From the IMG/VR virus record IMGVR_UViG_3300022698_000267, positions 124,001-188,000 of that record: DNA of 64,000 nucleotides; one strand, given 5' to 3'. This document shows positions 643 to 33,055 of the stretch, one piece after another. A program made the translations under genes and the position numbers. Position 1 is the first letter of the stretch, and every line of letters starts with the position of its first letter. The notes beneath the pieces were generated by a model. That model saw only the letters and a program-made list of their open reading frames with translations, did no database searches and was not told where the DNA came from.

Positions 643-753
643 TTGTATTTCTTCAACACCTCCCCCCCAACACCTTTCTCATGAGAGGTGAGGTCCCCTC
701 CCTCACCTCTCCCTACCTATCACATAAATTATTCTGAAAAGTTCAAATAGTAC

Positions 754-782
754 TTGACATTTCTATCAAATTCTGTTATACT
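754..782 (+). promoter_or_regulatory. sigma70-type early promoter (cassette copy 1)
   Basis: TTGACA-17-TATACT with extended -10 TG. Confidence 0.85.
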
Positions 783-933
783 ATGTTTAAGTGGTTAGGG
801 GAAATAGAATAAAGGGGGGATAGCAAATGATGAATGAAGCCGAATATGATTTTTACATGGAAGCACAGAGACAGGCGTGGGAAGTAGAGCAAGAGCTGGA
901 AAAAGAAGAAGCGGAAGAGGAGGTGATAGAATA

Positions 934-1236
934 ATGGAAATGGCTTTCGAATGGCAGCGGGAAGAGATTTTGAATAAGGCTAACAATTTTGAGAAGTTTG
1001 CAGTAAAGGGAAAGACAGTCACTCTTATCTGTTCGGATTGTACAATTGTCCTTCAAGTTGGAGTTGTACAAAGGGTGGAATTGGTTTTTGTTTACTACTT
1101 CCCAAAGGCTGCAGATGAGAAACCTTTGGAATTTTGGATCAATAAATCGTCTATGTCACAGTTGGGTGATAAGCTTCGAAGTTCTGCTTTTAAACGGGTC
1201 CCATGGACTGAAGTTCCAGTACTGAAGTTCCAGTAA
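934..1236 (+). CDS. hypothetical protein
   Basis: GGAGG RBS, TAATG coupling to a small acidic ORF at 827-934. Confidence 0.65.
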   Translation: MEMAFEWQREEILNKANNFEKFAVKGKTVTLICSDCTIVLQVGVVQRVELVFVYYFPKAADEKPLEFWINKSSMSQLGDKLRSSAFKRVPWTEVPVLKFQ

Positions 1237-1297
1237 AAACTATTCCTTTACTTAGATTAAAACCTTTTTAAAATCATTTGAATCTACGTAGAGGACA

Positions 1298-2293
1298 TTG
1301 ATGGGAAAGAGTAGGTTAAAACCCAAGGTTAAGAAAGAAATTGCAGTTGTTCCACATTCTCGTGTGGATCCTAAGAAGGGAGTTGAAGAAGTTGAAGGAC
1401 ATCAACGTAGTATGGATGTTAATGCTGCTGTTTCTGATGTACATAAATCGAAGGAAAATGCAGCAAATCCTGATAGACAAAGACGAGAGTTTGTGGATGA
1501 TATGAATCAGAAGTTTTCTGAGATGAATAGTAGGGAAGAAACACATGATGACTTTAGAAAAAAGACTGGACAAAGAGAACAAGCAAAGCGTCTTACCAGT
1601 GAAGAAATAGGAACTATTGATAAGTACACAGAGGAAGTTGGATTCAATGAAAAGTTGCGAAAGTCTATCAAGGATGGACATACCAATGATCCAGACGTAA
1701 AGCTTCTGGATTCTGTGGTTTCTAAAGCAGAACCACTAGCAAATGATACGTTAGTAGTTAGAGGATCCAGAAGAGATTTTCATAAAACCATTGGTAGAGA
1801 GTTGAAAGTTGGTGAAGTCATCACAGACCATGGATTTATGTCTACCACTACACAACCGGATGTAGCTTCTAATTTCATGTGGAAGCAGAATAAAGATACC
1901 GGAAAGATCAAGATGGGAACCTTCTATCAAATAAGTTTGCCGAAAGGAACGAAAGCATTTCCTATAAATGCTAAGGAGCATGAATATCTTCTTTCCAGAA
2001 ACATGAACTTTGAAGTACTAAATAATCAAGTAGTTGATATGAACAAAGATTCCCAGAAGTTACCAAGGATACTAAAACAGTATGGAGAGCAAGGATTTAA
2101 TCCCCTCACTTGGGGAGTTGGGAGTGATGCCGATACTGGTGGTGGTTCTGCTGGCGGCTCGACCGGTTTGGAATCAGAAAAGTTACGACTGATTCATTTA
2201 CGAGCTTTGCCAAATGAAAACCAGAGAGGAAAAGTTAGTGACAAACCTTTACAACCTAAGAAGACTGTTATTCGGAGAAAGAAAAGGAAATAA
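1298..2293 (+). CDS. ADP-ribosyltransferase (VIP2/exoenzyme-like R-S-E fold) with basic low-complexity N-terminus
   Basis: LVVRG ... DHGFMSTT ... ISLPKGT ... EHEYLL match the R, STT and ExE motifs. Confidence 0.8.
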   Translation: MMGKSRLKPKVKKEIAVVPHSRVDPKKGVEEVEGHQRSMDVNAAVSDVHKSKENAANPDRQRREFVDDMNQKFSEMNSREETHDDFRKKTGQREQAKRLTSEEIGTIDKYTEEVGFNEKLRKSIKDGHTNDPDVKLLDSVVSKAEPLANDTLVVRGSRRDFHKTIGRELKVGEVITDHGFMSTTTQPDVASNFMWKQNKDTGKIKMGTFYQISLPKGTKAFPINAKEHEYLLSRNMNFEVLNNQVVDMNKDSQKLPRILKQYGEQGFNPLTWGVGSDADTGGGSAGGSTGLESEKLRLIHLRALPNENQRGKVSDKPLQPKKTVIRRKKRK

Positions 2294-2294
2294 A

Positions 2295-2489
2295 ATGGCA
2301 CCTATTGAAAGCAAAGGAGATGAATCAAGGTTTACTTGGGATGACCCATCATTGTTATCTTTCACTGATTGTGGTACCTGCAGAAATAAGTTTCCTGAAG
2401 ACTTTGGATGCAAAGTATATCCAGATATTATTCCAATCAATTTCCGCACACCAAATGTTGATAAATGTCCCGATTACGTTAGAGAGTAA
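2295..2489 (+). CDS. small 4-Cys protein, putative ART partner or immunity protein
   Basis: RFTWDD, CxxC..C..YP..IP..CP; coupled to the ART gene; paralog at 42623. Confidence 0.6.
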   Translation: MAPIESKGDESRFTWDDPSLLSFTDCGTCRNKFPEDFGCKVYPDIIPINFRTPNVDKCPDYVRE

Positions 2490-2515
2490 TTTCTTTTAAA
2501 ATCTTCATAAAGTAC

Positions 2516-2544
2516 TTGACAAAACCTCTAATTTTTGTTATATT
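2516..2544 (+). promoter_or_regulatory. sigma70-type promoter (copy 2)
   Basis: TTGACA-17-TATATT. Confidence 0.8.
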
Positions 2545-2582
2545 ATGTTTAATATGTTAATGAAAGTTAAGGGGAGGGGAAA

Positions 2583-3074
2583 ATGCAAATTCGAATCAAC
2601 ATTGAAGACGATATGGCAAAAGTGGATGAAAAGGCTATCCTGGAGAAGTTAAATACTTCCTTTAAGCAATATCCAAATAATTACATTTCATCTTTATTTA
2701 CTCAAGAGTTTGTTGATTGGTGTTCCTGGAGGATTAAGAATGATTTCCCTCTCGATGTGATGGAGTACATCAATGCTTATGAGGAAGATAAAGATGCCCG
2801 AGCAGAACGTGATTTGGCCCAGGCTGAAGCAGATTCTAAAGAAGAACTTCTTGAAGTTCGGGATCAAATTATACGAGATAGAGAGGAAGAGATTTTAAAG
2901 CTTCATGAACAAATTGAAATCATGCAATCCAAGATGGATACAATGGTTGATCGAATCGTTTTTGAGGCTATGAGCAGGGAAAGAGACAAACAAGACCAGG
3001 CTTATGCAAGGTTGGAACAAGAGAATAAAGACTTGAAAGCCCATCTTTATGATTTAATGACAAAAAAATCTTGA
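2583..3074 (+). CDS. hypothetical coiled-coil protein
   Basis: 163-aa ORF behind promoter, GGAGG RBS. Confidence 0.7.
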   Translation: MQIRINIEDDMAKVDEKAILEKLNTSFKQYPNNYISSLFTQEFVDWCSWRIKNDFPLDVMEYINAYEEDKDARAERDLAQAEADSKEELLEVRDQIIRDREEEILKLHEQIEIMQSKMDTMVDRIVFEAMSRERDKQDQAYARLEQENKDLKAHLYDLMTKKS

Positions 3075-3866: not shown

Positions 3867-3944
3867 TGCGTCTGTAGCTGAGAGGTTCAGCGGTGGACTC
3901 TAAATCCACGTCAACGTAGGTTCGAATCCTACCAGACGCACCCA
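3867..3944 (+). tRNA. amber suppressor tRNA, anticodon CTA
   Basis: Acceptor GCGTCTG/CAGACGC, D stem GCTG/CAGC, anticodon stem GTGGA/TCCAC with loop CT-CTA-AA, T arm GTAGG-TTCGAAT-CCTAC. Confidence 0.9.
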
Positions 3945-3964
3945 AAAATAAATTCAAATAATAC

Positions 3965-3993
3965 TTGACAAAACCCCTCAAATATACTATAAT
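3965..3993 (+). promoter_or_regulatory. sigma70-type promoter (copy 3)
   Basis: TTGACA-17-TATAAT directly after the tRNA. Confidence 0.85.
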
Positions 3994-4024
3994 GTGTTTA
4001 ATTAAAAATTGAGGGAGATACATT

Positions 4025-5183: not shown

Positions 5184-5618
5184 GTGGCTACTATATCCTT
5201 AAATCAAGCCTGGGCAACGTTGGCAGAACCTATCGATAAGAATAAAGAGTATGAACGTGCACTTCGGGTAGTACGGGATAGTTACTTTGAAATTGAACAA
5301 GAACTGTTTCGTCTTAAGAAAGATGGAAAGAACGAAGTGACAAGTAGAAAGAAATCAATCCGGGATGATATTCGAGCTAATAGAAGACAAAATCATCCTC
5401 ATGAAGCTAAATTCTACAGCGAGTGGATGCGGGAACATGCAAGTAGAATAGGTAAATCATATACCACTCTCGAATACTTACTGGCGGAGAATCCGAATTA
5501 TCCTGCAGGTGAATGTACCGAACGGGATGAATATGTTGCAGAAGTTTTAATTCAATGGCTTGGTTCTCCGGTTGGATTAAGTTTCTTACGTAATTGTGGA
5601 TTTGAAGAGGAAGAATAA
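5184..5618 (+). CDS. hypothetical protein
   Basis: AAGGAG RBS, GTG start; C-term IQWLGSPVG motif. Confidence 0.65.
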   Translation: MATISLNQAWATLAEPIDKNKEYERALRVVRDSYFEIEQELFRLKKDGKNEVTSRKKSIRDDIRANRRQNHPHEAKFYSEWMREHASRIGKSYTTLEYLLAENPNYPAGECTERDEYVAEVLIQWLGSPVGLSFLRNCGFEEEE

Positions 5619-5693
5619 AGGGGTGTTGCCAAGTGGTAAGGCAGCGGGCCTTGGACCCGCTATTCGGAGGTTCGAATCCTTCCACCCCTGCCA
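5619..5693 (+). tRNA. tRNA-Gln(TTG), C at position 33
   Basis: Acceptor AGGGGTG/CACCCCT, anticodon stem GCGGG/CCCGC, loop CC-TTG-GA, CCA. Confidence 0.9.
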
Positions 5694-5703
5694 AATTAAA
5701 TTA

Positions 5704-5837
5704 TGATGGGTGCCCTAATGGAGGGTTGATGTTCGGAGAGTTTGAGGCCGGTAACCTTTGAGCTTTTCAAACATCGGGAACAATTACCGGTTGTGAAATG
5801 ATAATTTGTAGGTTCGAATCCTACCATCCATCAGCCA
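5704..5837 (+). ncRNA. tRNA-like RNA with anticodon arm replaced by an approximately 80-nt insert
   Basis: TGATGGGTG/CATCCATCA stem + G + CCA, D arm CCCT-AATGG-AGGG, T arm GTAGG-TTCGAAT-CCTAC. Confidence 0.7.
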
Positions 5838-5865
5838 CAATTTAAAGGGAGTACTTGAGTAGGAA

Positions 5866-6219
5866 ATGTTAAGTCCTCAGATAAAAGAATATATGCGATT
5901 GATTGGTTTACAATCTTTTCCATTCAATTCTGAGCAGTTGAATAAAGCATGGAGGTTTGCTGCTAGTCAATGTCATCCAGATAAACCTGGTGGAAGTTTG
6001 CAGAAGATGCAACGTGTGAATGAAGCTCGTGCTGCATTGAAACCTCTCGTCACCATTGTAGTAGAAAAGCCAGTAGAAAAGGTTACTAAACAAAGAACAA
6101 ACGAGCCAGGGACGAATAATTTTTTGCGACAAATGAGGAAACAAACCATTAAAGGTTTGAAGAAGAAAAAGGCGCAAGGAGCAGATACCGACGATTTATT
6201 GAAGTTTTGGCAAGAGTAA
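5866..6219 (+). CDS. DnaJ (J-domain) protein
   Basis: KAWR..ASQCHPDKPGGS...MQRVNEA with the HPD motif. Confidence 0.85.
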   Translation: MLSPQIKEYMRLIGLQSFPFNSEQLNKAWRFAASQCHPDKPGGSLQKMQRVNEARAALKPLVTIVVEKPVEKVTKQRTNEPGTNNFLRQMRKQTIKGLKKKKAQGADTDDLLKFWQE

Positions 6220-6222
6220 TAC

Positions 6223-6309
6223 GGCACCGTGGCGAAGCTGGGAGACGCGCCAGATTTAGGATCTGGTGACCGAAAGGTCGTGGGAGTTCGATCCTCCCCG
6301 GTGCTACCA
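6223..6309 (+). tRNA. tRNA-Leu(TAG)
   Basis: Long variable arm, loop TT-TAG-GA, CCA. Confidence 0.95.
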
Positions 6310-6609
6310 TTTAAGAGGATTAGGCTAATGTATTACTGCAAAACATGTGAATTGAGTATTTCAGAAGAGAATGTTCTTACAGATCGTGATGGTGATCCAT
6401 ATTCCAAAGATACTAAATTTTGGAGCATATGTCCTTATTGTTTAGAACCAGTAGAGGAGTTGGACAGTGATAGTATATAAAGATTGGGTGGAACTTAAAG
6501 ATGGCAAACGTTATGTTTGCGAAGGGTACTTTTTATTTGGAAAGGTTCCATTATTTATTTCCAAATATGATCCAGATGTTCCTGGAAATTCAGACAAGAA
6601 ATAATCATT

Positions 6610-6697
6610 GCCAAAGTGGTGGAATTTGGTATACACGGTGGATTCAAAATCCACTGACCTTCGGGTCATGGGAGTTCGATCCTCCCCTTTGGCACCA
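6610..6697 (+). tRNA. tRNA-Leu(CAA)
   Basis: Long variable arm, loop TT-CAA-AA, CCA. Confidence 0.95.
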
Positions 6698-6878
6698 TTT
6701 AACTAGGAGAACAAATGGAAGATTCTAAAGCTCAACAATGTGTCGTTGACATTCGAAAATGGGCTATGGGAATGGTTAATTGTTCTCATGCACTCTGTTC
6801 AATAGCAGAAGCAGGTTATGAAGAACGTTATGGAAATGAAGTATTGAAAATCATTGAAAAATATGAGAAGTAAATAAA

Positions 6879-8419: not shown

Positions 8420-8498
8420 CTGCGTGTAGCTCAGTCTGGTAGAGCGCTCGCTTTGGGAGCGAGAGGTTTCGGGAGTTCAATTCTCCCCACGCAGACCA
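8420..8498 (+). tRNA. tRNA-Pro(TGG)
   Basis: Cloverleaf, loop TT-TGG-GA, CCA. Confidence 0.95.
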
Positions 8499-8520
8499 TT
8501 AAAATAATTTCAAATAATAC

Positions 8521-8549
8521 TTGACATTTTTATTCATTTCCTATATAAT
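8521..8549 (+). promoter_or_regulatory. sigma70-type promoter (copy 5)
   Basis: TTGACA-17-TATAAT, then TTTAAGTGGTTGGGGAAA leader. Confidence 0.85.
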
Positions 8550-8586
8550 AGATTTAAGTGGTTGGGGAAATTATAAAGGAGATGTT

Positions 8587-8859: not shown

Positions 8860-9085
8860 TAAAGCAGGAAGGTTGCTTTTACAACGTAACGGAATTGATG
8901 ATGAAAATACTTATGTTACGCAAAGTTGTCGTTTTCAGATTGATCAATTCTGTGATGTTTTTTGTCCTTTGTTCGGTGAACCAAAAGTTGTAAGAGTAAT
9001 GACAAATGCACGATCCATTGAAACCATTCAACTTTCCCTCTGTCAAAAAACTTTGGTTTTTGAAGGCATAATTATCGAAAAATAA
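8843..9085 (+). CDS. hypothetical Cys-containing protein
   Basis: AAGGA RBS; C..Q...C...CPLFGEP motif. Confidence 0.6.
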   Translation: MKAKINKAGRLLLQRNGIDDENTYVTQSCRFQIDQFCDVFCPLFGEPKVVRVMTNARSIETIQLSLCQKTLVFEGIIIEK

Positions 9086-9098
9086 ATTCAAATAGTAC

Positions 9099-9127
9099 TT
9101 GACTTTTTGTTCTATGTCCTATATAAT
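9099..9127 (+). promoter_or_regulatory. sigma70-type promoter (copy 6)
   Basis: TTGACT-17-TATAAT. Confidence 0.85.
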
Positions 9128-9154
9128 GCATTTAAATCAATTGAGGAGGGAACA

Positions 9155-9991: not shown

Positions 9992-10402
9992 CTAAGGAGG
10001 ACAAGATGTTGCGTTATCTCAACACATTTTTAATACTGTTTGCTACTCTTCTTGTCTTAATGGCTTCTGATAACTTGGAAGACATAAGATTGTTTGTTGC
10101 TACCATACTACTGCTATTTTGTGCAGCTATCAGCTTTGCAAGAGCTACATAACTAGGAGGACAAGATGGCTTTTTTACCTGATAATACAGTACAACCAAG
10201 AGTAGTAACAACTTGGGATTCTTTACCTCCGGTGGTAGAGGCATATGGTGAAACTTTTTCAACAAGGGTTTTGGCATATAACTATAGTAAGATGCAAAAA
10301 GCTTTGGAATCAATTCGAGATCATGGCTTAGACGCAAAGCAATGTCGTGATGCGGCTTCAGATGCTTTAACTCATGTAATATAAAATAAATTCAAATAAT
10401 AC

Positions 10403-10431
10403 TTGACATTTTTCCCTCTATCATATATAAT
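10403..10431 (+). promoter_or_regulatory. sigma70-type promoter (copy 7)
   Basis: TTGACA-17-TATAAT. Confidence 0.85.
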
Positions 10432-10664
10432 GTTGTTAAATTAAAAGATAGGGGGGATTTTCATTATGGAAGACAACACAGTAAAGATAGTTGCTAATAA
10501 CGAAGTGGTTGAGTTGCATATGTTCGGTAAATTTGAGGCCAGTTGGGATCTGGATACTGGTGTGGATGTGACCAAAACCATTCTTCCATATGCAGTGAAA
10601 AGAGCCGTTGAAATTGGTAAAGAGCGTAAGGCGGTGGAAATTCGAAAAGTACTGGGGTGCTAAT

Positions 10665-11590: not shown

Positions 11591-11681
11591 CTTATAGAAC
11601 AAAATATCCCTCCCAACCCAACCCTGAAGATTAAGGGATCATTTCTGATCCCTTTTTCTTTGTAAAAAGTTCAAATAGTAC

Positions 11682-11710
11682 TTGACTTTTTAGTTCGTAG
11701 TCTATATAAT
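11682..11710 (+). promoter_or_regulatory. sigma70-type promoter (copy 8)
   Basis: TTGACT-17-TATAAT + GGTTGGGG leader. Confidence 0.85.
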
Positions 11711-12030
11711 ACGTTTAAGTGGTTGGGGAAAACAGTAAGGAAGGATAGAAGGAGGAACTTTACTTGGAACTTTATAAGGAGCCTTATTTGAATAAAGATG
11801 GCAGGATTTTTCTTACCAAAGGTGGTAAGCCTAATAAAAACAGAAAGAATAAAAGGCTATCTAGGTTAAAATCTGATCTTCGGAAGTTAAATGGTCTTCC
11901 CCCCTATAACGATATGTCTAATATTTGCTGGGGGGATAGTTACTTCAATAAAAGCATTAGAAGTCGTTATAGTAAATCAGAGATTAAACAGGCTGAAAAA
12001 GAGTTGGGTTTAAAATAAGGGAGGTGGCAA

Positions 12031-12435: not shown

Positions 12436-12514
12436 TCATTAATCTCATCACTATCCTCCCAAAGGGTTAGTCTTCATGATGACCCTTTTCCTTGTAAAAA
12501 AATTCAAAAAGTAC

Positions 12515-12543
12515 TTGACATTTTGTTCAAAATAATATATAAT
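12515..12543 (+). promoter_or_regulatory. sigma70-type promoter (copy 9)
   Basis: TTGACA-17-TATAAT. Confidence 0.85.
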
Positions 12544-12847
12544 GTATTTAATGGTGAGGGTGATAGGGTAAATTAAAAAGGGAGGTAGTAAAATGGGGTA
12601 CAAAAATTTTGGTGTTGATGTTTCACTTGCTAATGAAATCAGGGGCTACATCAAAAATGGTGACGTGAAAAATCTGGTGAAAATTTGTGGGCAACTTGAC
12701 ACTACTCCACGTGAGTTGGTGATGCTTGAATGTGAACCAACTCTCCGTGATGCTGTATGTGAAAAATTGGGGTTCGTTTGGGTCGGTTAATTTAAAATTG
12801 GGGGGTTTCAACCCCCCAAAAAAAATTAAAAAATATTCAAAAAGTAC

Positions 12848-12876
12848 TTGACATTTTGCTCCAAATAATATATAAT
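12848..12876 (+). promoter_or_regulatory. sigma70-type promoter (copy 10)
   Basis: TTGACA-17-TATAAT. Confidence 0.85.
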
Positions 12877-12926
12877 ACGAATAAGACGTTGGGGAAATGG
12901 TTAAAATTTAAATGGGAGGTAGCAAA

Positions 12927-13235: not shown

Positions 13236-13813
13236 CCCATTCTTTCAGCTTCCTATCCAATCTGCAAACAATCGTTGCAAACTGCTTAACTATATGAACA
13301 AAGGATGAATATTACTAAATACTTTCTAAGGAGGGGAAGTATGAAAGAAATCAACTTACGTTACATGCTTTCTATTCATCCTGGACTTGGAATTTACAGA
13401 TTATGTATTGTATTTGCAGAGGATGAAGAGAACTATTATGGTCATTGGGTCGTTGATGTTGGAGATTTCAAGACTAAGTTTCCGAAGAAGGGGACCAGAG
13501 CATTGACTGAAGAAGAGGTAGAGAATTACAACAGTTTTCGTTTTAGAAGAACGAAAGGTATTGTATTCGAAATTAAGATGAATTACGATGGTACTCCGAA
13601 AGGACTGAAGAAAAAATTTGAGTAATTTATGGAAAAGGTAAGAGATCAATTAGAGAAAGCATTCGAATATCTTACAGAGTGTGAGAAACAACCAACCTTC
13701 TTTTGCTTGGAACAAATGGAGAAGTACATTCGAAGATCCCTTACTTTTGTTGAGGAAGAAAGAACAAGAATAAATATGAAAATGCGTTTATTGAAAAAAA
13801 ATTCAAAAATTAC

Positions 13814-13842
13814 TTGACATTCTACTAAAATTTTGTTATACT
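13814..13842 (+). promoter_or_regulatory. sigma70-type promoter (copy 11)
   Basis: TTGACA-17-TATACT. Confidence 0.85.
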
Positions 13843-13886
13843 ACATTTAAGAGGTTGGGGATAACATTTAAACAAGGAGGAAGCAA

Positions 13887-15473: not shown

Positions 15474-15522
15474 ACTGTCGAATGTAAAAGTTCCGGGGGT
15501 TCAAATCCCTCCTCCTCCGCCA
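15434..15522 (+). tRNA. tRNA-Ser(GCT)
   Basis: Long variable arm, loop TT-GCT-AA, G73, CCA. Confidence 0.93.
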
Positions 15523-15541
15523 AAATAATTTCAAATAATAC

Positions 15542-15570
15542 TTGACATTTTCATTCATTTCCTATATAAT
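15542..15570 (+). promoter_or_regulatory. sigma70-type promoter (copy 12)
   Basis: TTGACA-17-TATAAT; nearly identical to copy 5. Confidence 0.85.
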
Positions 15571-15761
15571 AGATTTAAGTGGTTGGGGGAAATATTAATA
15601 CGGAGGAAAGATAATGAAACCTACTAAATTCCTTTGTTCCAATGCCAAAGATTTTTGTTGTGGAAAAGCTAACAAGTTGACCATGAAAGGTGTCATTCGG
15701 GCCATTTGTAAGAAAGAAGCCAAGATCGAAATCAAAGAACAGTTGGTGGAAGATAAGTAAT

Positions 15762-16043: not shown

Positions 16044-16310
16044 ATGCACTTTTATCATATAGCTTCTTCAGAAGATGCATTGGCCTATTTGCTAGATTGT
16101 ACTTTGGCTACTGTGGAAACAATGGCTGAAAAGAAGAGGATTCCTAAGTATGAATATGAACGTCATGTTGGAATAGCACAGAGGAATTTGGAATTGTGTA
16201 GGAAGTTCGATTGTAATATTGCTGGAACCAGAGGACAGAAGGTGATGGAAGAGTTTAATGGTGATGTTTCAGAATATGGACTTTCTATTCAAATACAAAC
16301 TAATACTTGA
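16044..16310 (+). CDS. hypothetical protein, paralog of 15177
   Basis: AYLLDCTLATVETMAEKKR. Confidence 0.7.
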   Translation: MHFYHIASSEDALAYLLDCTLATVETMAEKKRIPKYEYERHVGIAQRNLELCRKFDCNIAGTRGQKVMEEFNGDVSEYGLSIQIQTNT

Positions 16311-16335
16311 CAAAACCTTTCAAATACACTATAAT
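16307..16335 (+). promoter_or_regulatory. sigma70-type promoter (copy 13) driving a candidate ncRNA
   Basis: TTGACA-17-TATAAT; boxA-like TGTTCTTTGAAAA at 16357-16369. Confidence 0.8.
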
Positions 16336-16365
16336 AGTATAAGAAGTTGGAATTTTTGTTCTTTG

Positions 16366-16772: not shown

Positions 16773-16818
16773 AATTTTTATACCTTCATTAAAATTCTCA
16801 AAAATCAGTAAATAATAC

Positions 16819-16847
16819 TTGACTTTTATTTCTAGATATTATATAAT
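16819..16847 (+). promoter_or_regulatory. sigma70-type promoter (copy 14)
   Basis: TTGACT-17-TATAAT. Confidence 0.8.
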
Positions 16848-17047
16848 ATTGGAAATAAAAGTTAGTCATCATGGAGAATTTAAATGACAAAACAATCAAA
16901 GATTATGGTGACAATGCGGGTTCAGAAAACAATTGCCTTTGAAAATTTTGAAGACGATTATGTTGGTCAATTGAATGAGATGATTGGTCAATTGAATAAT
17001 CTGGGTTACGCAGTTGATGTTGAGTCAGAAGATGATGTTTAATATGC

Positions 17048-18957: not shown

Positions 18958-19033
18958 GGCCTGTAGCTCAGTTGGCTAGAGCCCCCGGCTCATAACCGGA
19001 TGGTCAAAGGTTCGAATCCTTTCAGGCCCACCA
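18957..19033 (+). tRNA. tRNA(CAT), probably Ile2
   Basis: GGGCCTG acceptor, CCGG-CT-CAT-AA-CCGG arm resembling lysidine-modified Ile2, CCA. Confidence 0.85.
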
Positions 19034-19052
19034 AAATAAATTCAAATAGTAC

Positions 19053-19081
19053 TTGACAAATCCTCTCATTTATACTATAAT
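19053..19081 (+). promoter_or_regulatory. sigma70-type promoter (copy 15)
   Basis: TTGACA-17-TATAAT. Confidence 0.85.
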
Positions 19082-19120
19082 AGATAGTACGATAAGAGGA
19101 TTTTTCATGAGGGGACTAAA

Positions 19121-19732: not shown

Positions 19733-19760
19733 AATAATTTAAAAAAGTTGTAAATAATAC

Positions 19761-19789
19761 TTGACAAAACCTCTAAAATCTGTTATACT
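19761..19789 (+). promoter_or_regulatory. sigma70-type promoter (copy 16)
   Basis: TTGACA-17-TATACT. Confidence 0.85.
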
Positions 19790-20064
19790 ACCTTTAAGAC
19801 GTTGGGGAGAACATTTAAATAAGGGGATAGAATGAGATACGATACTTGGGAAGAAAAACGGTTGGATGAAGAAATTGATCGTGAATGGTGGGAGAAAATG
19901 AAAGAAAATGTGAGAAAAGAGAAGGAGAAAAAAGAGAAGTAGTTATATGGGGGGTTCGCCCCCCAATTAAATCGTTAACTATAAGAACAAAGAAAGGGGG
20001 GGCTTATTATGCGCTATTGCTAAATTCTTCTAACTAAATGAACAAAATACTAAAACATAAAGTG

Positions 20065-20955: not shown

Positions 20956-21150
20956 ATGAAAAGATTTATACTTGTCCTCTCATTCCTGTTCTTAGTTAGT
21001 TGTGCTAGCAGTACTGGTGTTGCTAATAGGGATATTGGTAAGATTCAGAGTCAGTTGGTTACTTTAACCGTCGAGTGTGAAAAAGGTTATCAACCTTCCT
21101 GTGATAAAATACCCTCCAAAAAGCAAGAACTTCAAAAATTACTTCAATAA
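20956..21150 (+). CDS. small lipoprotein
   Basis: MKRFILVLSFLFLVSC lipobox-like signal. Confidence 0.6.
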   Translation: MKRFILVLSFLFLVSCASSTGVANRDIGKIQSQLVTLTVECEKGYQPSCDKIPSKKQELQKLLQ

Positions 21151-21154
21151 GTAC

Positions 21155-21183
21155 TTGACATTTTCTCTACAATCCTATATAAT
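21155..21183 (+). promoter_or_regulatory. sigma70-type promoter (copy 17)
   Basis: TTGACA-17-TATAAT. Confidence 0.85.
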
Positions 21184-21189
21184 AGATAT

Positions 21190-21453
21190 ATGATATGGGA
21201 TAGAGCACAAGCAAAACAATATTTAAAGTCAATAGAATCTTTACTGCTTTCTCAAGGATATACAGCGGAAGTGGTTGGTTCAGTGGATAAAATCGGACAT
21301 TCAGACCATGATTTAGATATTCTTCTGATTCCGGTTAGAGAAGATTACACTTTCGAATATCTGTATGAGTTTTGGAAAGGTGATTTTTTTGGTTCTTGTT
21401 ATACAATGGCTGATGATCAAGGAAGAATGATAGATATATTCTTCGAGGAGTAG
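21190..21453 (+). CDS. minimal nucleotidyltransferase (Pol beta superfamily), apparently leaderless
   Basis: VVGSV..GHSDHDLDILL; ATG 6 nt after the -10 element. Confidence 0.6.
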   Translation: MIWDRAQAKQYLKSIESLLLSQGYTAEVVGSVDKIGHSDHDLDILLIPVREDYTFEYLYEFWKGDFFGSCYTMADDQGRMIDIFFEE

Positions 21454-23754: not shown

Positions 23755-24348
23755 TCAATTAGGTCCTTTGGAAGAAGCATGGTTGCAGTTTAATAAAGAT
23801 AATGATTTTTCTATTGAATGTGCTGAATGTTTTGAAGAAGGTTTCAAGGCAGCTTTAAACGATAAATTACGATTTCATTCTTCCTATTCTGGTTTTATTT
23901 CCACTTTAATAGTGGAGTTTGATATAGAGTTACAAAAGAAGACTGGTTGGGGTAGGAATGAGATAAAAGATAGATTTCAGAAGTGTTTAATTAGGGCATT
24001 GACAAAGACTTTAGACAGAGAAAAGGAGTAATGATGGATACTTCAAGTGTGCCTATCATAAAACTTGAGTTAGAGGGTATGAAGCACAGAATTATGACTC
24101 ATCTTGGTGTTCATGGAAGTGAACTTGGTGACATAATTAATGCTGGTATAGATAGAGCAATCAAATCTTATGACTTCGATGATAAGGTACTTTCTACAGT
24201 TCATGAGGTCTTGAATACAGAGATTGACAACTTTCTTAAATATGGTGGTGGTAGAGTTGTTATAAGAGAGGCCGTTGCAAAAACTCTTAATGAAGCTTTT
24301 AATATCTCTTCTAAACCAGATGAACCAAAACCACCAGATTCAGAATAA
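23747..24348 (+). CDS. two coupled hypothetical proteins (23747-24031 and 24031-24348)
   Basis: Overlapping start/stop codons, GGAG RBSs. Confidence 0.6.
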
Positions 24349-24363
24349 AGTTGTATATAATAC

Positions 24364-24392
24364 TTGACAAACCAGCTACAATCTATTATAAT
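24364..24392 (+). promoter_or_regulatory. sigma70-type promoter (copy 18)
   Basis: TTGACA-17-TATAAT. Confidence 0.8.
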
Positions 24393-24604
24393 GCATCTAA
24401 TGGTTGATTAATAATGGAGGTGGCAAAATGGATTTTTTAGGGTGGTCAATGCTTTTAGTTTTTATTTTTGGTGGAATAGCACAGTCCTTTCGGCACAATA
24501 AACTTTTGAACAATCTATTCGGTGGATTGGCTTTATTTACAGCTATCCCGGTGGTGATTGTGATAGCTTTACTTTAACATTTAAACCAAAGGAGAGGAGA
24601 GAAG

Positions 24605-25072: not shown

Positions 25073-25430
25073 CATACAGAACGATGAGTAATATAAAAAC
25101 CAAAACAATTCGAGACGTTAAAGTAGTGTTGTACCTTCCAGAGGATGTTGCTTTATGGTTAAAAGGTATAATGCAGAACCCTTTTTATGGTCAGACTCCT
25201 GATAACGAAAAAGAAATTGATTCAAAAAATAGACATGACCTTTGGGATGCTTTAAACGATTCGTTGCCACATAAAACATAACAATGTTGGGTTCATTTTA
25301 ACCTGTCCATAGTCGATGGTTGAATCGGCTCACCAACTAGTATGTGCGGGTGAATCTCCTTTCTTATCGTTGGGTTCCATTCTGGAGGTTGACTAGTTGC
25401 CTCCCACCTACCAAAAGTTACAAATACTAC

Positions 25431-25459
25431 TTGACTTTTCTTCTAAAATATACTATAAT
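25431..25459 (+). promoter_or_regulatory. sigma70-type promoter (copy 19)
   Basis: TTGACT-17-TATAAT. Confidence 0.8.
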
Positions 25460-25533
25460 TATGTAAAGGAAGAAAGAGCTACTCTTTCTTAACTTATAGA
25501 ACAAATACTAATACTTAGTAATGGAGTAGTAAA

Positions 25534-26151: not shown

Positions 26152-26551
26152 AATGGTTGGAATGTTTGTAACGGCTAAATCATCTCAATTGGGATACCCT
26201 GTTCAAGGTTGGGTAGCAGTAGAAGAACCAGAACTTATTATTGTTGGTATGTCTGGTCATCGGTATCGTTGTGATAAAGGGACAAAGTATGTGGAGGTAG
26301 ACAATCCACCAATTATGCCTCCAAAGGTACAAAGTGTGTTGGATGAATATAGAAATGCCCAGAATGAAGAGGAAGGAAATGTGGTGGGTTTATAAATGTG
26401 AAGACTGTGGAAGACTTTGGATTGATCCAGGTGGTGTTCCATTAAAGTGTTCTAATTGTGCAAGTAAAGACCGAGAACAATTATATGTCATAGAAAATCC
26501 CCGTAAAGAGTTAGAAAAGTATTTAAATGAAGAAAAAGGTTCTAATAATAC

Positions 26552-26580
26552 TTGACAAAGTTCTTCATTTAATATATAAT
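26552..26580 (+). promoter_or_regulatory. sigma70-type promoter (copy 20)
   Basis: TTGACA-17-TATAAT. Confidence 0.85.
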
Positions 26581-26614
26581 GGAAATAAAAGGTTGGGAAA
26601 TGGAGGATAAGATT

Positions 26615-27028: not shown

Positions 27029-27371
27029 TGGTCACTGAAGTTAAAAGATTTAAAGCAAATGACGGTCAGGTTTTTAAAACCGAGAAAGAAGCAGAAGACC
27101 ATGAAAAGATTCTTGCTTTACAGGAGTGGTACGAGGAACATAAACTTTCTGGATCCACTTATGGTTCTTCTGTTAGTTGGGATGATTTTATCGATTGGTT
27201 AATAGATCATCGGGATGAAGCAAAGGCTATCCTTAAACTGTATAAATAAAGGAGAGAATAATGGAAGGTATAATCATAATCATCTTTTTTCTTTGGGCTG
27301 TGGCACAAATTGGTAAAGTGGTCAATCGTAAGAAAGACTAAAAAATTTTTCAAAAAAAGTTCAAATAATAC

Positions 27372-27400
27372 TTGACATTTCTACTCCATTCTGTTATACT
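27372..27400 (+). promoter_or_regulatory. sigma70-type promoter (copy 21)
   Basis: TTGACA-17-TATACT + GAGGTAAGAGGTTGGG leader. Confidence 0.85.
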
Positions 27401-27442
27401 AGAGGTAAGAGGTTGGGAGAACAGAACAAGGGAGGTAGTACA

Positions 27443-30468: not shown

Positions 30469-30550
30469 GAAAAACTCCTATCATTGATTGTTTATTTTTC
30501 ATACTCCTAATGTTTTTCATCACTTTAATTAAAAAAAGTTCAAAAAGTAC

Positions 30551-30579
30551 TTGACATTTTTAACAAATTCTGTTATACT
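30551..30579 (+). promoter_or_regulatory. sigma70-type promoter (copy 22)
   Basis: TTGACA-17-TATACT. Confidence 0.85.
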
Positions 30580-30736
30580 AGAGGTAAGAGGTTGGGGAAA
30601 TACATAATGGAGGTGACGAAATGTTATTTAATGAGATCAAATCAAACATTGTCCATTATTTAATAGCCGTTACAGCAGCCAGCAGTATTTTACTTCTTCT
30701 CATTTACTAAAATTTTAAAAAAACTTCAAAAAGTAC

Positions 30737-30765
30737 TTGACAAAATCGGTTGCAGATTATATAAT
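30737..30765 (+). promoter_or_regulatory. sigma70-type promoter (copy 23)
   Basis: TTGACA-17-TATAAT. Confidence 0.85.
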
Positions 30766-30817
30766 ACGTTTAAGTGGTTGGGGAAATGGTTAAAATTTTA
30801 AAAGGGGGGTAGTTAAA

Positions 30818-31093
30818 ATGATCGAGAAAATCCAGAGATATTTCGAGTTGAAGGACCAAATCAAAGTTTTGGACGATGAGTTGAAAGCCATTCGAAGTGA
30901 AGTTTCCACCCTATTTGGTGGGGCTAAAGTTGAAATCGAAGTCGACGGTTCCAAGGTCCGTTGCCAAACCAAAAAACGTTCCACCAAAAGTTGTGATTGG
31001 TCCACGTTTAAGGAAGTCAATGAGCATCTTTACAATCAGATAGTCACCGAATCTGAGTCTTCCTACTATGAGCTGAGAAAATTGGCTCGCTAA
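30818..31093 (+). CDS. paralog of 12927-13202
   Basis: High identity, same stop position (TAA here, TAG there). Confidence 0.8.
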   Translation: MIEKIQRYFELKDQIKVLDDELKAIRSEVSTLFGGAKVEIEVDGSKVRCQTKKRSTKSCDWSTFKEVNEHLYNQIVTESESSYYELRKLAR

Positions 31094-31244
31094 TCATCTC
31101 CTAAAAGTGGTGGTGGGGCAACCCACCATCCACGTTTAACTTGCCGAACAAAGCCTCCAGCGTTTAACTATATGACCAAAGCTACTTTCAGCTATCGAAT
31201 GGAAACGCTTGTCAAAATTATTTGCAAGAAAGTTCAAAAAGTAC

Positions 31245-31273
31245 TTGACAAAATCGGTTGTAGCCTATATAAT
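31245..31273 (+). promoter_or_regulatory. sigma70-type promoter (copy 24)
   Basis: TTGACA-17-TATAAT. Confidence 0.85.
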
Positions 31274-31321
31274 AGAGGCAAGTGGTTAGGGAAATGGTTA
31301 AAATTTAAGGGAGGTAGTAAA

Positions 31322-31807
31322 ATGCAAATACATGAATTGAACAGCGGTTTCTTACGATCACCTGAAGCAATAAATAATGTGCAGATGGTACGAGGTGGAG
31401 CACCGATTGAAGTCAAGAAGGATGATGAGCAGAAGACATACGTTGCAATCGGTAACGTTCAGGGCAGAAGCCTTGCCAAAGGAATGGTCGTGTTGGCCTC
31501 CTACAACGAAGGTAATCAAGGAGCTGACTTGGTTGAGGTGCTAGGGTTCACAAGTGATAAGGAACACTATGGTGAGGGTGGTGTTGCCTTTGAATCAGCA
31601 AAAGAAATGCTCAAACATTATGGTGTAAAGAGCCTTCAAGAGCTGGAAGACCTGCAGGACAAGAATGAGTATGGGTACCACTCTTATTTAGTTGTTCGGG
31701 ATTTGAACGATGACGAAGAAGGTGCCTGGTATTACCTCTACGAAGGTCGATGGGCAAGGGGTTCCGGTGCGGAGAAATTATCCTTCGTCAGAATGAATTT
31801 ACAGTAA
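31322..31807 (+). CDS. hypothetical protein
   Basis: GGAGG RBS behind promoter. Confidence 0.7.
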   Translation: MQIHELNSGFLRSPEAINNVQMVRGGAPIEVKKDDEQKTYVAIGNVQGRSLAKGMVVLASYNEGNQGADLVEVLGFTSDKEHYGEGGVAFESAKEMLKHYGVKSLQELEDLQDKNEYGYHSYLVVRDLNDDEEGAWYYLYEGRWARGSGAEKLSFVRMNLQ

Positions 31808-31949
31808 CGATCAGGGGGCTTCGGCCCCCATTTTCATAACCTGCCTGGCGTTTAACTATAAGACCAAAACAGCTAACGGATACTGGAATTTGTACGTCAA
31901 TGATTCCTTGAAATATCAAATACTATTTGCAAGAAAGTTCAAAAAGTAC

Positions 31950-31978
31950 TTGACATTTTGTCTCCAAGACATTATAAT
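31950..31978 (+). promoter_or_regulatory. sigma70-type promoter (copy 25)
   Basis: TTGACA-17-TATAAT. Confidence 0.85.
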
Positions 31979-32227
31979 AGAGGTAAGAGGTTGGGGGAAA
32001 TACTGCTAAAGGGAGATACAAAATGGCAAAGAAATTATTGGTTGATAAGGTAAGGGTGACAGGGAAAGACGAAAATGGCTACCGTGCTATCGAAGTTGAT
32101 AGGGCTGGTGAACCTTTAAGTTTTCCCATTATGTTTTCCGATACAAGCATCTCGCAACAAGGCATTGACAAGCTTATTAAGCTGATAAAGAAAGAAATGG
32201 CCTTAATATAAAAAGTTCAAAAAGTAC

Positions 32228-32256
32228 TTGACAAAACCTCCTCAAGACATTATAAT
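32228..32256 (+). promoter_or_regulatory. sigma70-type promoter (copy 26)
   Basis: TTGACA-17-TATAAT. Confidence 0.85.
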
Positions 32257-32298
32257 AGAGGTAAGAGGTTGGGGAAATAGAAAAGAGGGGGAAATAAA

Positions 32299-32535
32299 AT
32301 GGAGCAAGTTATAGAGAATTTAGAAGTACAGGGAATTACCTGCAGGGCCAACGTAATTACCGAACATGGTGACTTTGAAGTGGTTGGGGTTATCGCCGGT
32401 AACGAAGTTGATCAATTAAGGCTTGAAACCATTCTCGAGAACAGGAAAGCGGAATTTGATTTTGAGAACCTTGTTGAGAGAAGGCTCATTGAAGAAGCAG
32501 AGGAAGATTATCAAGAACCGGACGATTGGTACTAA
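32299..32535 (+). CDS. small acidic hypothetical protein
   Basis: GAGGGGG RBS behind promoter. Confidence 0.65.
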   Translation: MEQVIENLEVQGITCRANVITEHGDFEVVGVIAGNEVDQLRLETILENRKAEFDFENLVERRLIEEAEEDYQEPDDWY

Positions 32536-32745
32536 TAATCTAATGGGGGCTTCGGCCCCCAAAGGAGGTATAAAAATGTTCGAGTCGACTCCGTGGTGGT
32601 TAATTTTGGTAGAAATTTCTGCTGGTGGTATTTGGTGTGTAGCAGTAACCTACTACCTTATTAAAATGTGCAGGGCAGTTTCGAGTTAAAATCATAGGGG
32701 GGCTTAAAAAGCCCCCATTTCTTTGCAAGAAAGTTCAAAAAGTAC

Positions 32746-32774
32746 TTGACATTTCTACCATAATCCGTTATAAT
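32746..32774 (+). promoter_or_regulatory. sigma70-type promoter (copy 27)
   Basis: TTGACA-17-TATAAT. Confidence 0.85.
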
Positions 32775-33055
32775 AGAGGTAAGAGGTTGGGGAACCTAAT
32801 TATAAAATGGGAGGTAGCAAATGGAAAAAGTAAAAGGAGTAGACAGGAAGACTTACAAAAAAGCGCTTCGGTATCTTTCGAAGAAATTCGGTCTCAAGAA
32901 GTCAGATTTTGAATTCGAGGCAGCCTGGATTGATGAGTACGTTCGTTGTCTCCTTTTCAGCATCATCAATGAGAAATCCCGTCTGTACAAAAGCACCGTT
33001 GGCTACCAGCTGTAGTCGATTTCTACAAGCCCCCACTTCTGGGGGCTTTTTCAGC

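What the first reader, a model, noticed from the sequence alone, without database searches (positions are those of the whole stretch)
743..32800. 27 standardised sigma70 promoter cassettes with a dyad overlapping -35 and a G-rich leader
Seen: every copy is TAC-TTGAC(A/T)-exactly 17 bp-TATA(A/C/T)T on the + strand, and I noticed none beyond 32.8 kb. 19 of 27 have TCAA-N7-TTGA dyad symmetry ending in the -35. About 15 continue TAAG(A/T)GGTTGGGGAAA. Several start right after a tRNA CCA or a C(UUCG)G hairpin. Known: comparable to T4-type PeSL cassettes and the SPO1 host-takeover region. Inference: the dyad is an operator for a phage regulator, and the repeats allow modular gene shuffling.
Basis: partly seen in the sequence, partly recalled or inferred. 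Interest (0 to 1): 0.6.

Follow-up and report, generated by a model that had tools for sequence, protein, structure and literature searches.

The report
Phage early promoters copying host promoters
A 273-kb uncultured phage drives about 100 small early genes and 19 tRNAs from 42 near-identical promoter units that copy the strongest promoters of its probable Clostridia hosts; this is a known phage strategy seen in a new lineage, and the proposed "operator dyad" is not supported.

Summary
TTGACW-N17-TATAHT occurs 27 times in the window (0.13 expected) and 42 times with the TAC prefix in the whole 273.5-kb phage. All copies are on the + strand, intergenic, and lie within one 47-kb field.

These are housekeeping-sigma promoters. 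TATACT −10s carry an extended −10 TGn in 13 of 13 copies, against 1 of 27 for TATAAT.

The "dyad" half (TTCAAAWAGTAC) is not phage-specific. The identical block + TTGACA-N17-TATAAT is found in more than 120 Ruminococcus, Oscillospiraceae and other Clostridia contigs, in front of tRNA genes, 16S rRNA, the rplJ leader and a SAM riboswitch. It matches the host's A-tract UP-type element plus extended −35, so the operator reading is not supported.

The G-rich box is specific to this phage. It sits exactly 7 nt after the −10 in 24 of 24 copies, but 8–24 nt from the SD. It most likely acts as an initial-transcribed or 5′-end module.

The cassettes are mosaic and neighbours resemble each other, which fits PeSL-like recombination. 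No relatives exist to prove shuffling.

A second motif, ATACTAAA, and a phage sigma with only region 2 probably run later genes.

Verdict: a new member of a known kind, of moderate to low interest.

The parts
729..803 (+). early promoter cassette (block TTCAAATAGTAC, -35 TTGACA, TGn + TATACT, G-box)
   Evidence: GC hairpin 42 nt upstream of the -35
2491..2565 (+). cassette (TTCATAAAGTAC, TTGACA, TGn + TATATT, no G-box)
3940..4014 (+). cassette (TTGACA/TATAAT, no G-box), directly after the tRNA with CUA anticodon
7778..7852 (+). cassette (TTGACT/TATAAT, no G-box), directly after tRNA-Arg
8496..8570 (+). cassette with G-box, directly after tRNA-Pro
9074..9148 (+). cassette (TTGACT/TATAAT, no G-box)
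10378..10452 (+). cassette (no G-box)
11657..11731 (+). cassette with G-box, preceded by a terminator-like hairpin at 11633-11654
12490..12564 (+). cassette with variant G-box (ATGGTGAGGG)
12823..12897 (+). cassette with G-box, after hairpin 12798-12819; leads a 91-aa ORF that has cassette-led paralogs
13789..13863 (+). cassette (TGn + TATACT, G-box)
15517..15591 (+). cassette with G-box, directly after tRNA-Ser
16282..16356 (+). degenerate-upstream cassette (no TTC block, no G-box); no ORF follows until tRNA-Met at 16698
16794..16868 (+). degenerate-upstream cassette (TTGACT/TATAAT)
19028..19102 (+). cassette (no G-box), directly after tRNA-Met; leads the NADAR gene
19736..19810 (+). cassette (TGn + TATACT, G-box variant GACGTTGGGG)
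21130..21204 (+). cassette (no G-box); heads the operon that holds the 200-aa candidate winged-helix protein and cpYpsA
24339..24413 (+). degenerate-upstream cassette
25406..25480 (+). degenerate-upstream cassette with a hairpin leader
26527..26601 (+). cassette with partial G-box (AAAGGTTGGGAAA)
27347..27421 (+). cassette (TGn + TATACT, G-box variant GGTTGGGAGA)
30526..30600 (+). cassette (TGn + TATACT, G-box)
30712..30786 (+). cassette with G-box; leads the 91-aa paralog of the ORF at 12927-13202
31220..31294 (+). cassette with G-box
31925..31999 (+). cassette with G-box; UUCG hairpin at 31814-31829 upstream
32203..32277 (+). cassette with G-box
32721..32795 (+). last cassette, with G-box; preceded by terminator-like hairpin 32698-32716
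1301..2293 (+). cassette-driven ADP-ribosyltransferase gene (PF03496), a possible modifier of host RNA polymerase

Best explanation
The repeats are the early (host-takeover) promoters of a new 273-kb tailed phage, and they are read by the host's housekeeping-sigma (sigmaA/sigma70-type) RNA polymerase.

Each unit of about 75-100 bp is a full-consensus promoter. It has an A-tract plus TTCAAA(A/T)AGTAC, which is the host clade's own proximal UP-type element and extended -35. It has TTGAC(A/T), exactly 17 bp of spacer, and TATAAT or a compensating TGn-TATACT. It then has an AT-rich discriminator and, in about two thirds of copies, a G/purine-rich, C-poor box (AAG(A/T)GGTT(G/A)GGGRA) fixed at the transcript start. 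A strong SD follows.

By copying the architecture of the host's tRNA, rRNA and ribosomal-protein promoters, the 42 units capture RNA polymerase straight after infection. They express about 100 small accessory genes and 19 tRNAs in one direction.

The G-box most likely acts at the promoter or the 5' end. It may give a stable initial RNA:DNA hybrid that helps escape from an over-tight promoter, and/or give an unstructured, C-poor, nuclease- and Rho-resistant 5' end. It probably does not act in translation initiation.

The units have spread and been homogenised by recombination between copies, as with PeSLs.

Shown: the sequence architecture, the covariation, the identity with host promoters, and the register of the G-box. 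Inferred: early timing, UP/alpha-CTD contact, the G-box mechanism, and recombination.
For: Count and strand: 27 in the window against 0.13 expected; 42 in the genome, all on the + strand; no 16- or 18-bp spacers. All copies are intergenic, 35-55 nt before a co-oriented start codon.

Compensation: TATACT with TGn in 13/13, TATAAT in 1/27.

Host identity: the full 41-bp pattern is found in more than 120 bacterial contigs, mostly Ruminococcus, Oscillospiraceae and other Clostridia. Of 126 sites, 26 lie directly in front of tRNAs. Others precede 16S rRNA, the L10 leader and a SAM riboswitch.

Unbiased host promoters share the A-tract and C at -1. Other phage records of this clade have one-strand arrays of the same promoter type.

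G-box: 21 of its 22 + strand occurrences are at cassettes. Its offset from the -10 is exactly 7 nt in 24/24, while its distance to the SD is 8-24 nt. The 5'UTRs are 5% C, 73% purine and unstructured. Purine-rich ITS is shared by other phage promoters of this type (0.74) more than by host ones (0.59). Published work shows that higher RNA/DNA hybrid stability and stacking in the ITS favour escape (PMC5961368).

Cargo: ART, ADP-ribosylglycohydrolase, NADAR, cpYpsA and DenV, with about 75% ORFans, is typical early cargo.

A distinct motif, ATACTAAA, plus a phage sigma with only region 2 fit a later promoter class.

Mosaicism and neighbour similarity.
Against: - There is no transcript data: no sequencing run was listed, so start sites and timing are inferred.
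- The host is not identified below 'Clostridia, probably Oscillospirales-like'.
- The exact GTAC variant that the phage prefers (27/42) is a minority (6/103) among unselected host promoters. Some phage-specific constraint on the block is therefore not excluded.
- The G-box mechanism is untested.
- The phage encodes its own sigma factor and a possible winged-helix protein.
Confidence: 0.75

Rival explanations
1. One reading: TCAA-N7-TTGA is an operator, and a phage-encoded regulator (for example the product of 21587-22198) binds it across the -35 to control the early promoters.
For: TCAA is present in 31/42 copies. The block is more uniform in the phage than in host promoters, with GTAC in 27/42 against 6/103. 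AAGTACTT at the block/-35 junction is an 8-bp palindrome in 12 copies (read). The 200-aa protein has a low-confidence H-H-H-beta-hairpin plus long-helix model, and its weak structural neighbours are mostly winged-helix regulators.
Against: The arms are only 4 bp, and the right arm is the -35 itself. Non-dyad positions are equally conserved. The identical block and -35 occur at more than 120 host housekeeping promoters, so no phage factor is needed to explain it. TCAA is not conserved in unselected host promoters. The candidate protein has no significant Pfam or Foldseek hit; the best values are E = 0.016-0.044 for three unrelated families, all below cut-off, and E = 0.018. No HTH, sigma or CsrA family was found among 96 field proteins at E < 0.001.
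Confidence: 0.08
2. The G-box is a regulatory target, not an ITS or 5'-end module. It would be either a non-palindromic DNA operator at +2..+16 or an RNA site for a phage or host protein, which shuts off or times the two thirds of early units that carry it.
For: Only 24-26 of 42 cassettes carry it, which defines two subclasses. It is lineage-specific: the viral-contig scan gave only 10 single hits, about what I estimate for chance. A fixed register to the promoter also fits an operator. T4 early shut-off is known to need unidentified factors (PMC2988021).
Against: The box has no symmetry. No recognisable RNA- or DNA-binding family was found in the field. Purine-rich ITS is a general trait of phage promoters of this type that lack this exact box.
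Confidence: 0.2
3. The G-box is a STAB-SD-type 5' stabiliser. A 30S subunit binds the SD-like purine run at the extreme 5' end and blocks RNase J1-type 5' exonucleolytic decay.
For: It lies at the 5' end. Pairing to the 16S 3' tail has a median of -7.8 kcal/mol, against -3.7 for random 18-mers. Such stabilisers are established in B. subtilis, including a polypurine one (PMC3997798, references 106 and 179). That the polypurine stabiliser comes from phage SP82 is from my own knowledge.
Against: Shuffled leaders pair better (-9.1), and true SDs reach -9.5. The order of bases is therefore not optimised for the anti-SD.
Confidence: 0.15
4. The cassettes are read by the phage-encoded sigma factor (genome 106,723-107,754), not by host sigmaA.
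For: A sigma70-family gene lies 2 kb upstream of the field.
Against: Only region 2 is detectable, so there is no recognisable -35-reading region 4. The cassettes are perfect housekeeping consensus and are identical to host stable-RNA promoters. The sigma operon itself has a TTGACT-N17-TATAAT promoter. A different motif, ATACTAAA, marks about 38 other upstream regions and is the better target for this sigma.
Confidence: 0.04
5. Conservation outside the hexamers, the G-box included, is only shared ancestry of recently duplicated units and has no function of its own.
For: Neighbouring cassettes are more alike than distant ones (16.9 against 19.9 mismatches in 37 nt, p < 1e-4). Spacer subfamilies with identical copies exist.
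Against: The same G-box follows unrelated spacers, and overall it is more conserved than the spacer (0.52 against 0.43, falling to 0.32 just downstream). Only one gene family was duplicated together with its cassette.
Confidence: 0.12

Closest known systems
T4 early promoters ('über' UP/-35/TGn/-10 promoters; Hinton 2010, PMC2988021)
   Same: There are dozens of copies with near-consensus sigma70 elements, UP-like A/T tracts and extra consensus regions. They out-compete host promoters immediately after infection and drive small non-essential genes. The phage also encodes ADP-ribosyltransferases.
   Different: The host here is a Gram-positive Clostridia-type organism. The spacer is exactly 17 bp. 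TGn is used only to compensate for TATACT. The upstream block is letter-for-letter that of host stable-RNA promoters. There is a G-rich box fixed at +2..+15. The phage is only remotely related (TerL about 25% identical).
PeSL cassettes of T4-type phages (Arbiol 2010, PMC2839356; Comeau 2014, PMC4122927)
   Same: The conserved composite unit is about 100 bp (stem-loop, AT-rich tract, -35, -10, SD) and lies in an ORFan-rich region. GGGG...CCCC hairpins occur. The modules are mosaic, which fits crossovers inside the unit.
   Different: Only about 9 of 42 units have the stem-loop. No pair of related genomes shows indels bounded by units, and no mini-circles have been shown. This is not a T4-type phage.
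T5 early promoters such as N25, with their purine-rich initial transcribed sequence
   Same: Both are escape-limited consensus promoters whose output depends on the ITS (PMC12464699 abstract; PMC5961368). Both have purine-rich starts.
   Different: The G-box sequence is unrelated, and its effect on escape is untested here.
SPO1/SP82 host-takeover module and 5' polypurine stabiliser (own knowledge; reference 179 in PMC3997798)
   Same: Both have clustered strong sigmaA early promoters in front of many small genes in a Gram-positive phage, and a purine-rich 5' leader.
   Different: The field is internal to the record (109-157 kb of 273 kb), not in a terminal redundancy. Pairing to the anti-SD is not optimised. 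No homology was tested or found.

Membership tests
housekeeping-sigma (sigma70/sigmaA) promoter | -35 TTGACA and -10 TATAAT hexamers separated by 17±1 bp | tested here: met
   All 42 copies have TTGAC(A/T), exactly 17 bp of spacer, and TATA(A/C/T)T.
housekeeping-sigma (sigma70/sigmaA) promoter | an extended -10 (TGn) can compensate for a weaker hexamer | tested here: met
   TATACT with TGn in 13/13; TATAAT with TGn in 1/27.
housekeeping-sigma (sigma70/sigmaA) promoter | placed upstream of, and co-oriented with, genes | tested here: met
   All copies are intergenic, on the + strand, 35-55 nt before a start codon.
housekeeping-sigma (sigma70/sigmaA) promoter | transcripts start 6-8 nt downstream of the -10 | not testable with these tools
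   No sequencing run was listed for this phage.
UP element (alpha-CTD site) | A/T-tract sequence immediately upstream of -35 at the strongest (stable-RNA) promoters | tested here: met
   The same block occurs at host tRNA, 16S and rplJ promoters. The A-tract is 66-72% conserved in 103 unselected host promoters. The proximal-subsite consensus AAAAAARNR, from my own knowledge of Estrem 1999, fits CAAAAAGTA.
UP element (alpha-CTD site) | binding by, and stimulation through, the alpha C-terminal domain | not testable with these tools
   This needs footprinting or transcription with alpha-CTD mutants.
PeSL (promoter-early stem-loop) cassette | a stem-loop terminator fused to the early promoter | tested here: inconclusive
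   About 9 of 42 units have a perfect GC hairpin 27-43 nt before the -35. Five follow a tRNA. The rest follow a stop codon directly. Terminator-like sites are not enriched overall.
PeSL (promoter-early stem-loop) cassette | about 100-bp conservation between copies, located in ORFan-rich plastic regions | tested here: met
   Repeat families are 46-87 nt long (the main ones 55-87 nt). About 75% of field proteins have no Pfam match.
PeSL (promoter-early stem-loop) cassette | insertions, deletions or replacements between close relatives are bounded by the cassettes; mini-circles form | not testable with these tools
   No diverged relative was found. Three sibling assemblies are identical. Only indirect signs exist.
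PeSL (promoter-early stem-loop) cassette | host genome is a T4-type phage | tested here: not met
   TerL is about 25% identical to T4-like cyanophage terminases, with nothing closer.
repressor operator (inverted-repeat site) | symmetry beyond chance, with the arms conserved more than the centre and specific to the regulated genome | tested here: not met
   The arms are 4 bp. The centre is as conserved as the arms. The same sequence is found at host housekeeping promoters.
STAB-SD / 5' ribosome-binding stabiliser | a 5'-proximal sequence with SD-grade complementarity to the 16S 3' end | tested here: inconclusive
   Median pairing is -7.8 kcal/mol, against -9.5 for true SDs, -3.7 for random sequence and -9.1 for shuffled leaders.

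The most novel reading that the evidence does not exclude
The G-box (AAG(A/T)GGTT(G/A)GGGRA at +2..+15) is a dedicated, lineage-specific control element. It would split the early promoters into two temporal or regulatory subclasses through a phage factor. That factor could be the winged-helix-like 200-aa protein. It could instead be an RNA-binding protein. A third option is coupling to the cassette-driven ADP-ribosyltransferase acting on alpha-CTD, as T4 ModA does. Under this reading the box is not a passive ITS or 5'-end optimiser.
Probability: 0.2. Interest if true: 0.55.

Novelty: new member of a known kind. Interest (0 to 1): 0.35.

Why it matters
The finding shows, in an uncultured jumbo phage with no described relatives, the same takeover logic as T4, T5 and SPO1. 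The phage copies, letter for letter, the UP/-35/-10 grammar of the host's stable-RNA promoters.

There are two practical uses:
- The promoter grammar points to a Clostridia host (Ruminococcus/Oscillospiraceae-like) for an orphan phage.
- The units are ready-made, very strong, standardised expression parts (promoter, leader and SD) for poorly tractable gut and rumen Clostridia.

The TSS-registered G-box is a testable candidate for a new initial-transcribed or 5'-leader element. The early/late split (consensus cassettes against ATACTAAA plus a sigma with only region 2) gives a transcription programme that can be checked by a single infection time course.

Tried and rejected
- Megablast of 6 kb of the window against described phages gave no match.
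- The terminase against described phages gave only ~25% identity. Terminase-based locus search in viral contigs found no relative.
- The 545-aa field protein in the word-index protein search matched only itself. Its three contigs are sibling assemblies that are identical apart from one indel. No comparative test of shuffling was therefore possible.
- The sequencing-run search listed no run, so read laying was not used and no start site could be mapped.
- Rfam finds only tRNAs in the window and no family for the leader.
- The scan of viral contigs for the -10 plus G-box gave 10 single hits, about what I estimate for chance.
- Anti-SD optimisation of the G-box is rejected, because shuffled leaders pair better.
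- A leader secondary structure is rejected (MFE z about +0.3).
- A G-quadruplex was considered and set aside from the sequence alone, because the G-runs lack usable loops.
- TAG recoding, suggested by the tRNA with a CUA anticodon, is rejected.
- A general excess of terminators in the field was not found.
- No HTH, sigma or CsrA family was found among 96 field proteins at E < 0.001.
- Foldseek on the candidate binder gave no hit at E ≤ 0.001.

Full report
**1.

The pattern TTGACW-N17-TATAHT matches 27 times in the window, all on the + strand, between 754 and 32746. Dinucleotide-preserving shuffles give 0.13 on average and never more than 2. Every copy is preceded by TAC.

The window is bases 124,001-188,000 of a 273,563-bp IMG/VR virus record, which is 97% complete by CheckV and has 35.8% G+C. 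With the TAC prefix the whole record has 42 copies, all on the + strand, confined to 109,597-156,746. Spacers of 16 or 18 bp do not occur at all.

- 19 of 27 copies have TCAA-N7-TTGA.
- 14-16 of 27 have the G-rich continuation.
- 5 copies lie directly behind a tRNA.
- Several lie behind GGGGCTTCGGCCCC-type hairpins.

**2. What the genome is.**

It is a tailed phage, with a large terminase and a portal. The terminase is only about 25% identical to anything described, the closest being T4-like cyanophage terminases. No relative was found in viral contigs.

The field of 42 cassettes covers about 47 kb of small, co-oriented genes, with roughly one cassette per two genes. It also contains 19 tRNAs.

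Of 96 predicted field proteins, about three quarters match no Pfam family. The rest are typical accessory or takeover cargo:
- an ADP-ribosyltransferase
- an ADP-ribosylglycohydrolase
- NADAR
- cpYpsA
- DenV
- a sulfotransferase
- GATase_4
- GGACT
- an HD protein

**3. They are genuine housekeeping-sigma promoters.**

Besides the perfect hexamers and the fixed 17-bp spacer, the copies show functional compensation. All 13 copies with the weaker TATACT carry an extended -10 TGn, against 1 of 27 with TATAAT. All copies are intergenic and lie 35-55 nt upstream of a start codon with a strong SD.

**4. The 'dyad' half is the host's own promoter grammar.**

I scanned one genome per prokaryotic species for the full 41-bp pattern TTCAAAWAGTAC-TTGACW-N17-TATAHT. 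By my estimate chance gives about 0.05 hits.

Of 126 sites, 26 lie 15-70 nt in front of a tRNA gene. Others precede 16S rRNA, the ribosomal protein L10 leader and a SAM riboswitch. Several end at contig breaks just after the promoter, as collapsed rRNA operons do.

An unselected set of 103 further consensus promoters in the same loci has the upstream consensus ttt.aaaaaattt.aaaAAa..tC-TTGACA. The features shared with the host are therefore:
- the A-tract, which fits the proximal UP subsite AAAAAARNR known from E. coli (my own knowledge; see also PMC4390567)
- a C directly before the -35

TCAA is not among them.

Within the phage, the non-dyad positions of the block are as conserved as TCAA. 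The arms are only 4 bp, and the right arm is the -35 itself. The operator interpretation is therefore unnecessary and unsupported.

One caveat remains. The phage's favoured GTAC ending (27 of 42) is a minority variant (6 of 103) in the unselected host sample. In 12 copies it forms an 8-bp palindrome, AAGTACTT. A founder effect or the true host's preference is the simplest reading, but a phage-specific constraint is not excluded.

**5. The candidate binder.**

The 200-aa product of 21596-22198 has no significant family match. Its best hits (E = 0.016-0.044, including Penicillinase_R) all fall below cut-off.

A single-sequence AlphaFold model (pLDDT 63) shows three helices, a beta-hairpin and a 67-residue helix. 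Atlas and Foldseek neighbours are weak (best E = 0.018) but are mostly winged-helix regulators.

It may be a DNA-binding protein, but nothing connects it to the cassettes.

**6. The G-box.**

AG(A/T)GGTT(A/G)GG occurs 22 times on the + strand of the genome. Of these, 21 lie just downstream of a cassette -10, and it occurs once on the other strand.

Scanning 2.9 million viral contigs for the -10 plus box gave 10 single hits, about what I estimate for chance, so the box is private to this lineage.

Its start is exactly 7 nt after the -10 in 24 of 24 copies. Its distance to the SD ranges from 8 to 24 nt, and to the start codon from 19 to 37 nt. It is therefore tied to the transcription start, not to translation initiation.

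The 5'UTRs are 40% A, 33% G, 22% U and only 5% C, and are no more structured than shuffles.

Pairing to the 16S 3' tail is moderate, at -7.8 kcal/mol. Shuffled leaders pair better, at -9.1 kcal/mol, so the box is not shaped as an SD.

Other phage arrays of the same promoter type also start with purine-rich sequence (0.74 purine), more than host promoters do (0.59). Published high-throughput work links higher RNA/DNA hybrid stability and base stacking in the initial transcribed sequence to faster promoter escape (PMC5961368). T5 N25 is the classical escape-limited phage promoter modulated by its ITS (PMC12464699 abstract).

My preferred reading is an ITS/5'-end module. It would help RNA polymerase leave an over-tight promoter and give an unstructured, C-poor 5' end. 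A 5' stabiliser (PMC3997798) or a regulatory site remain open.

**7. Spread of the units.**

Repeats are cassette-sized, 46-87 nt. Only one pair extends into the gene (12907-13201 and 30798-31092, 76% identical). The single cassette-led paralog family has three dispersed members, so gene duplication does not explain the repeats.

Adjacent cassettes are more alike than random pairs at 37 non-consensus positions (16.9 against 19.9 mismatches; 0 of 10,000 permutations reach this).

The modules are mosaic. One identical spacer occurs with three upstream and three downstream modules. One leader module occurs with three spacer classes. There are two four-gamete violations between spacer and discriminator classes.

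This is what recombination or gene conversion within the shared segments would give, and it parallels PeSLs (PMC2839356 and PMC4122927). Direct proof is not available, because no indel bounded by cassettes can be shown between relatives. The three assemblies of this phage are identical.

Only about 9 of 42 units carry the stem-loop that defines a PeSL.

**8. The rest of the programme.**

A sigma70-family gene with only region 2 detectable lies 2 kb upstream of the field. It is preceded by its own TTGACT-N17-TATAAT site.

A different motif, (A)ATACTAAA, is about 12-fold enriched upstream of genes outside the field. It lies within 150 nt (mostly 20-75 nt) of the start codon in 38 intergenic regions on both strands.

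This resembles T4 late promoters read by gp55 (my own knowledge) and supports the view that the cassettes are the early class.

A cassette-driven ADP-ribosyltransferase invites the T4 Alt/ModA analogy, in which the alpha-CTD residue needed for UP contact is modified (PMC2988021). That is speculation.

**9. Verdict.**

The promoter reading and the PeSL/T4 analogy are sound. The operator reading is not. This is a new member of the known kind 'phage early promoter arrays that mimic the host's strongest promoters', with a lineage-specific, start-site-registered G-rich box of unproven function.

Noticed in passing
window 3867-3944 (+): There is a tRNA with a CUA anticodon, which is amber-suppressor type (ARAGORN labels it 'Pyl'; Rfam tRNA 64 bits). 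The genome shows no TAG recoding. Making TAG a sense codon gains no more open frame than making TGA a sense codon, and TAG ends 79 of 386 called genes.
   Followed up: partly
window 34139-38011 (+): The phage encodes a 1290-aa hybrid histidine kinase (MASE3, several PAS domains, HisKA, HATPase_c, receiver), directly after the last cassettes. This is unusual cargo for a phage.
   Followed up: no
genome 106,723-107,754 (L014:6723-7751); motif sites genome-wide, e.g. window 3090, 14268, 23254, 33676: There is a phage sigma factor with only region 2 detectable, and a second promoter-like motif, (A)ATACTAAA, within 150 nt (mostly 20-75 nt) upstream of start codons in 38 intergenic regions on both strands, mostly outside the cassette field. 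It is a probable middle/late promoter class, like T4 gp55 with TATAAATA.
   Followed up: partly
window 1301-2293, window 41716-42615, L014:10169-11080, window 19121-19732: There is an ADP-ribosylation toolkit: two paralogous ADP-ribosyltransferases (33% identical), an ADP-ribosylglycohydrolase and a NADAR protein.
   Followed up: partly
window 44172-46622 (-) and 55321-57681 (+): The phage encodes full-length GyrA and GyrB homologs.
   Followed up: no
window 52231-52336 (+): Rfam reports a 106-nt tRNA match (48 bits) that ARAGORN did not call. It may be a tRNA with an insertion or intron.
   Followed up: no
L123 (Ruminococcus sp. MAG JAMOZU010000103.1), 5430-7931 (-): Six copies of the same promoter type lie at 390-800-bp spacing. 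At least two (and probably more) are followed within about 60-110 nt by a GC-rich inverted-repeat hairpin, and aragorn finds no tRNA there. This may be an array of short transcription units (small RNAs?), or a phage fragment binned with the MAG.
   Followed up: partly
IMG/VR records behind L027/L066, L024/L084, L087, L056: Other, unrelated phage contigs carry one-strand arrays (4-11 copies) of AAAAGTAC-TTGACW-N17-TATAAT promoters with purine-rich starts. Standardised host-mimicking promoter arrays are therefore common among phages of this host clade.
   Followed up: partly
genome 109,538-109,566 (-), L014:9538-9566: A consensus TTGACA-N17-TATAAT site lies on the opposite strand, back to back with the first cassette. 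It points into + strand genes and is followed by a CCCCTGG...CCAGGGG hairpin. It may drive an antisense or small RNA.
   Followed up: no
window 16307-16697: The cassette at 16307 is followed by no convincing ORF for about 390 nt, up to tRNA-Met (16698). It may drive a non-coding RNA or the tRNA itself.
   Followed up: no
genome 265,800-273,563 and 592-4111: The last 8 kb of the record has low coding density under every code tried, with short repeated ORF fragments. The 1090-aa and 3620-aa proteins at the two ends share about 60%-identical repeated domains.
   Followed up: no
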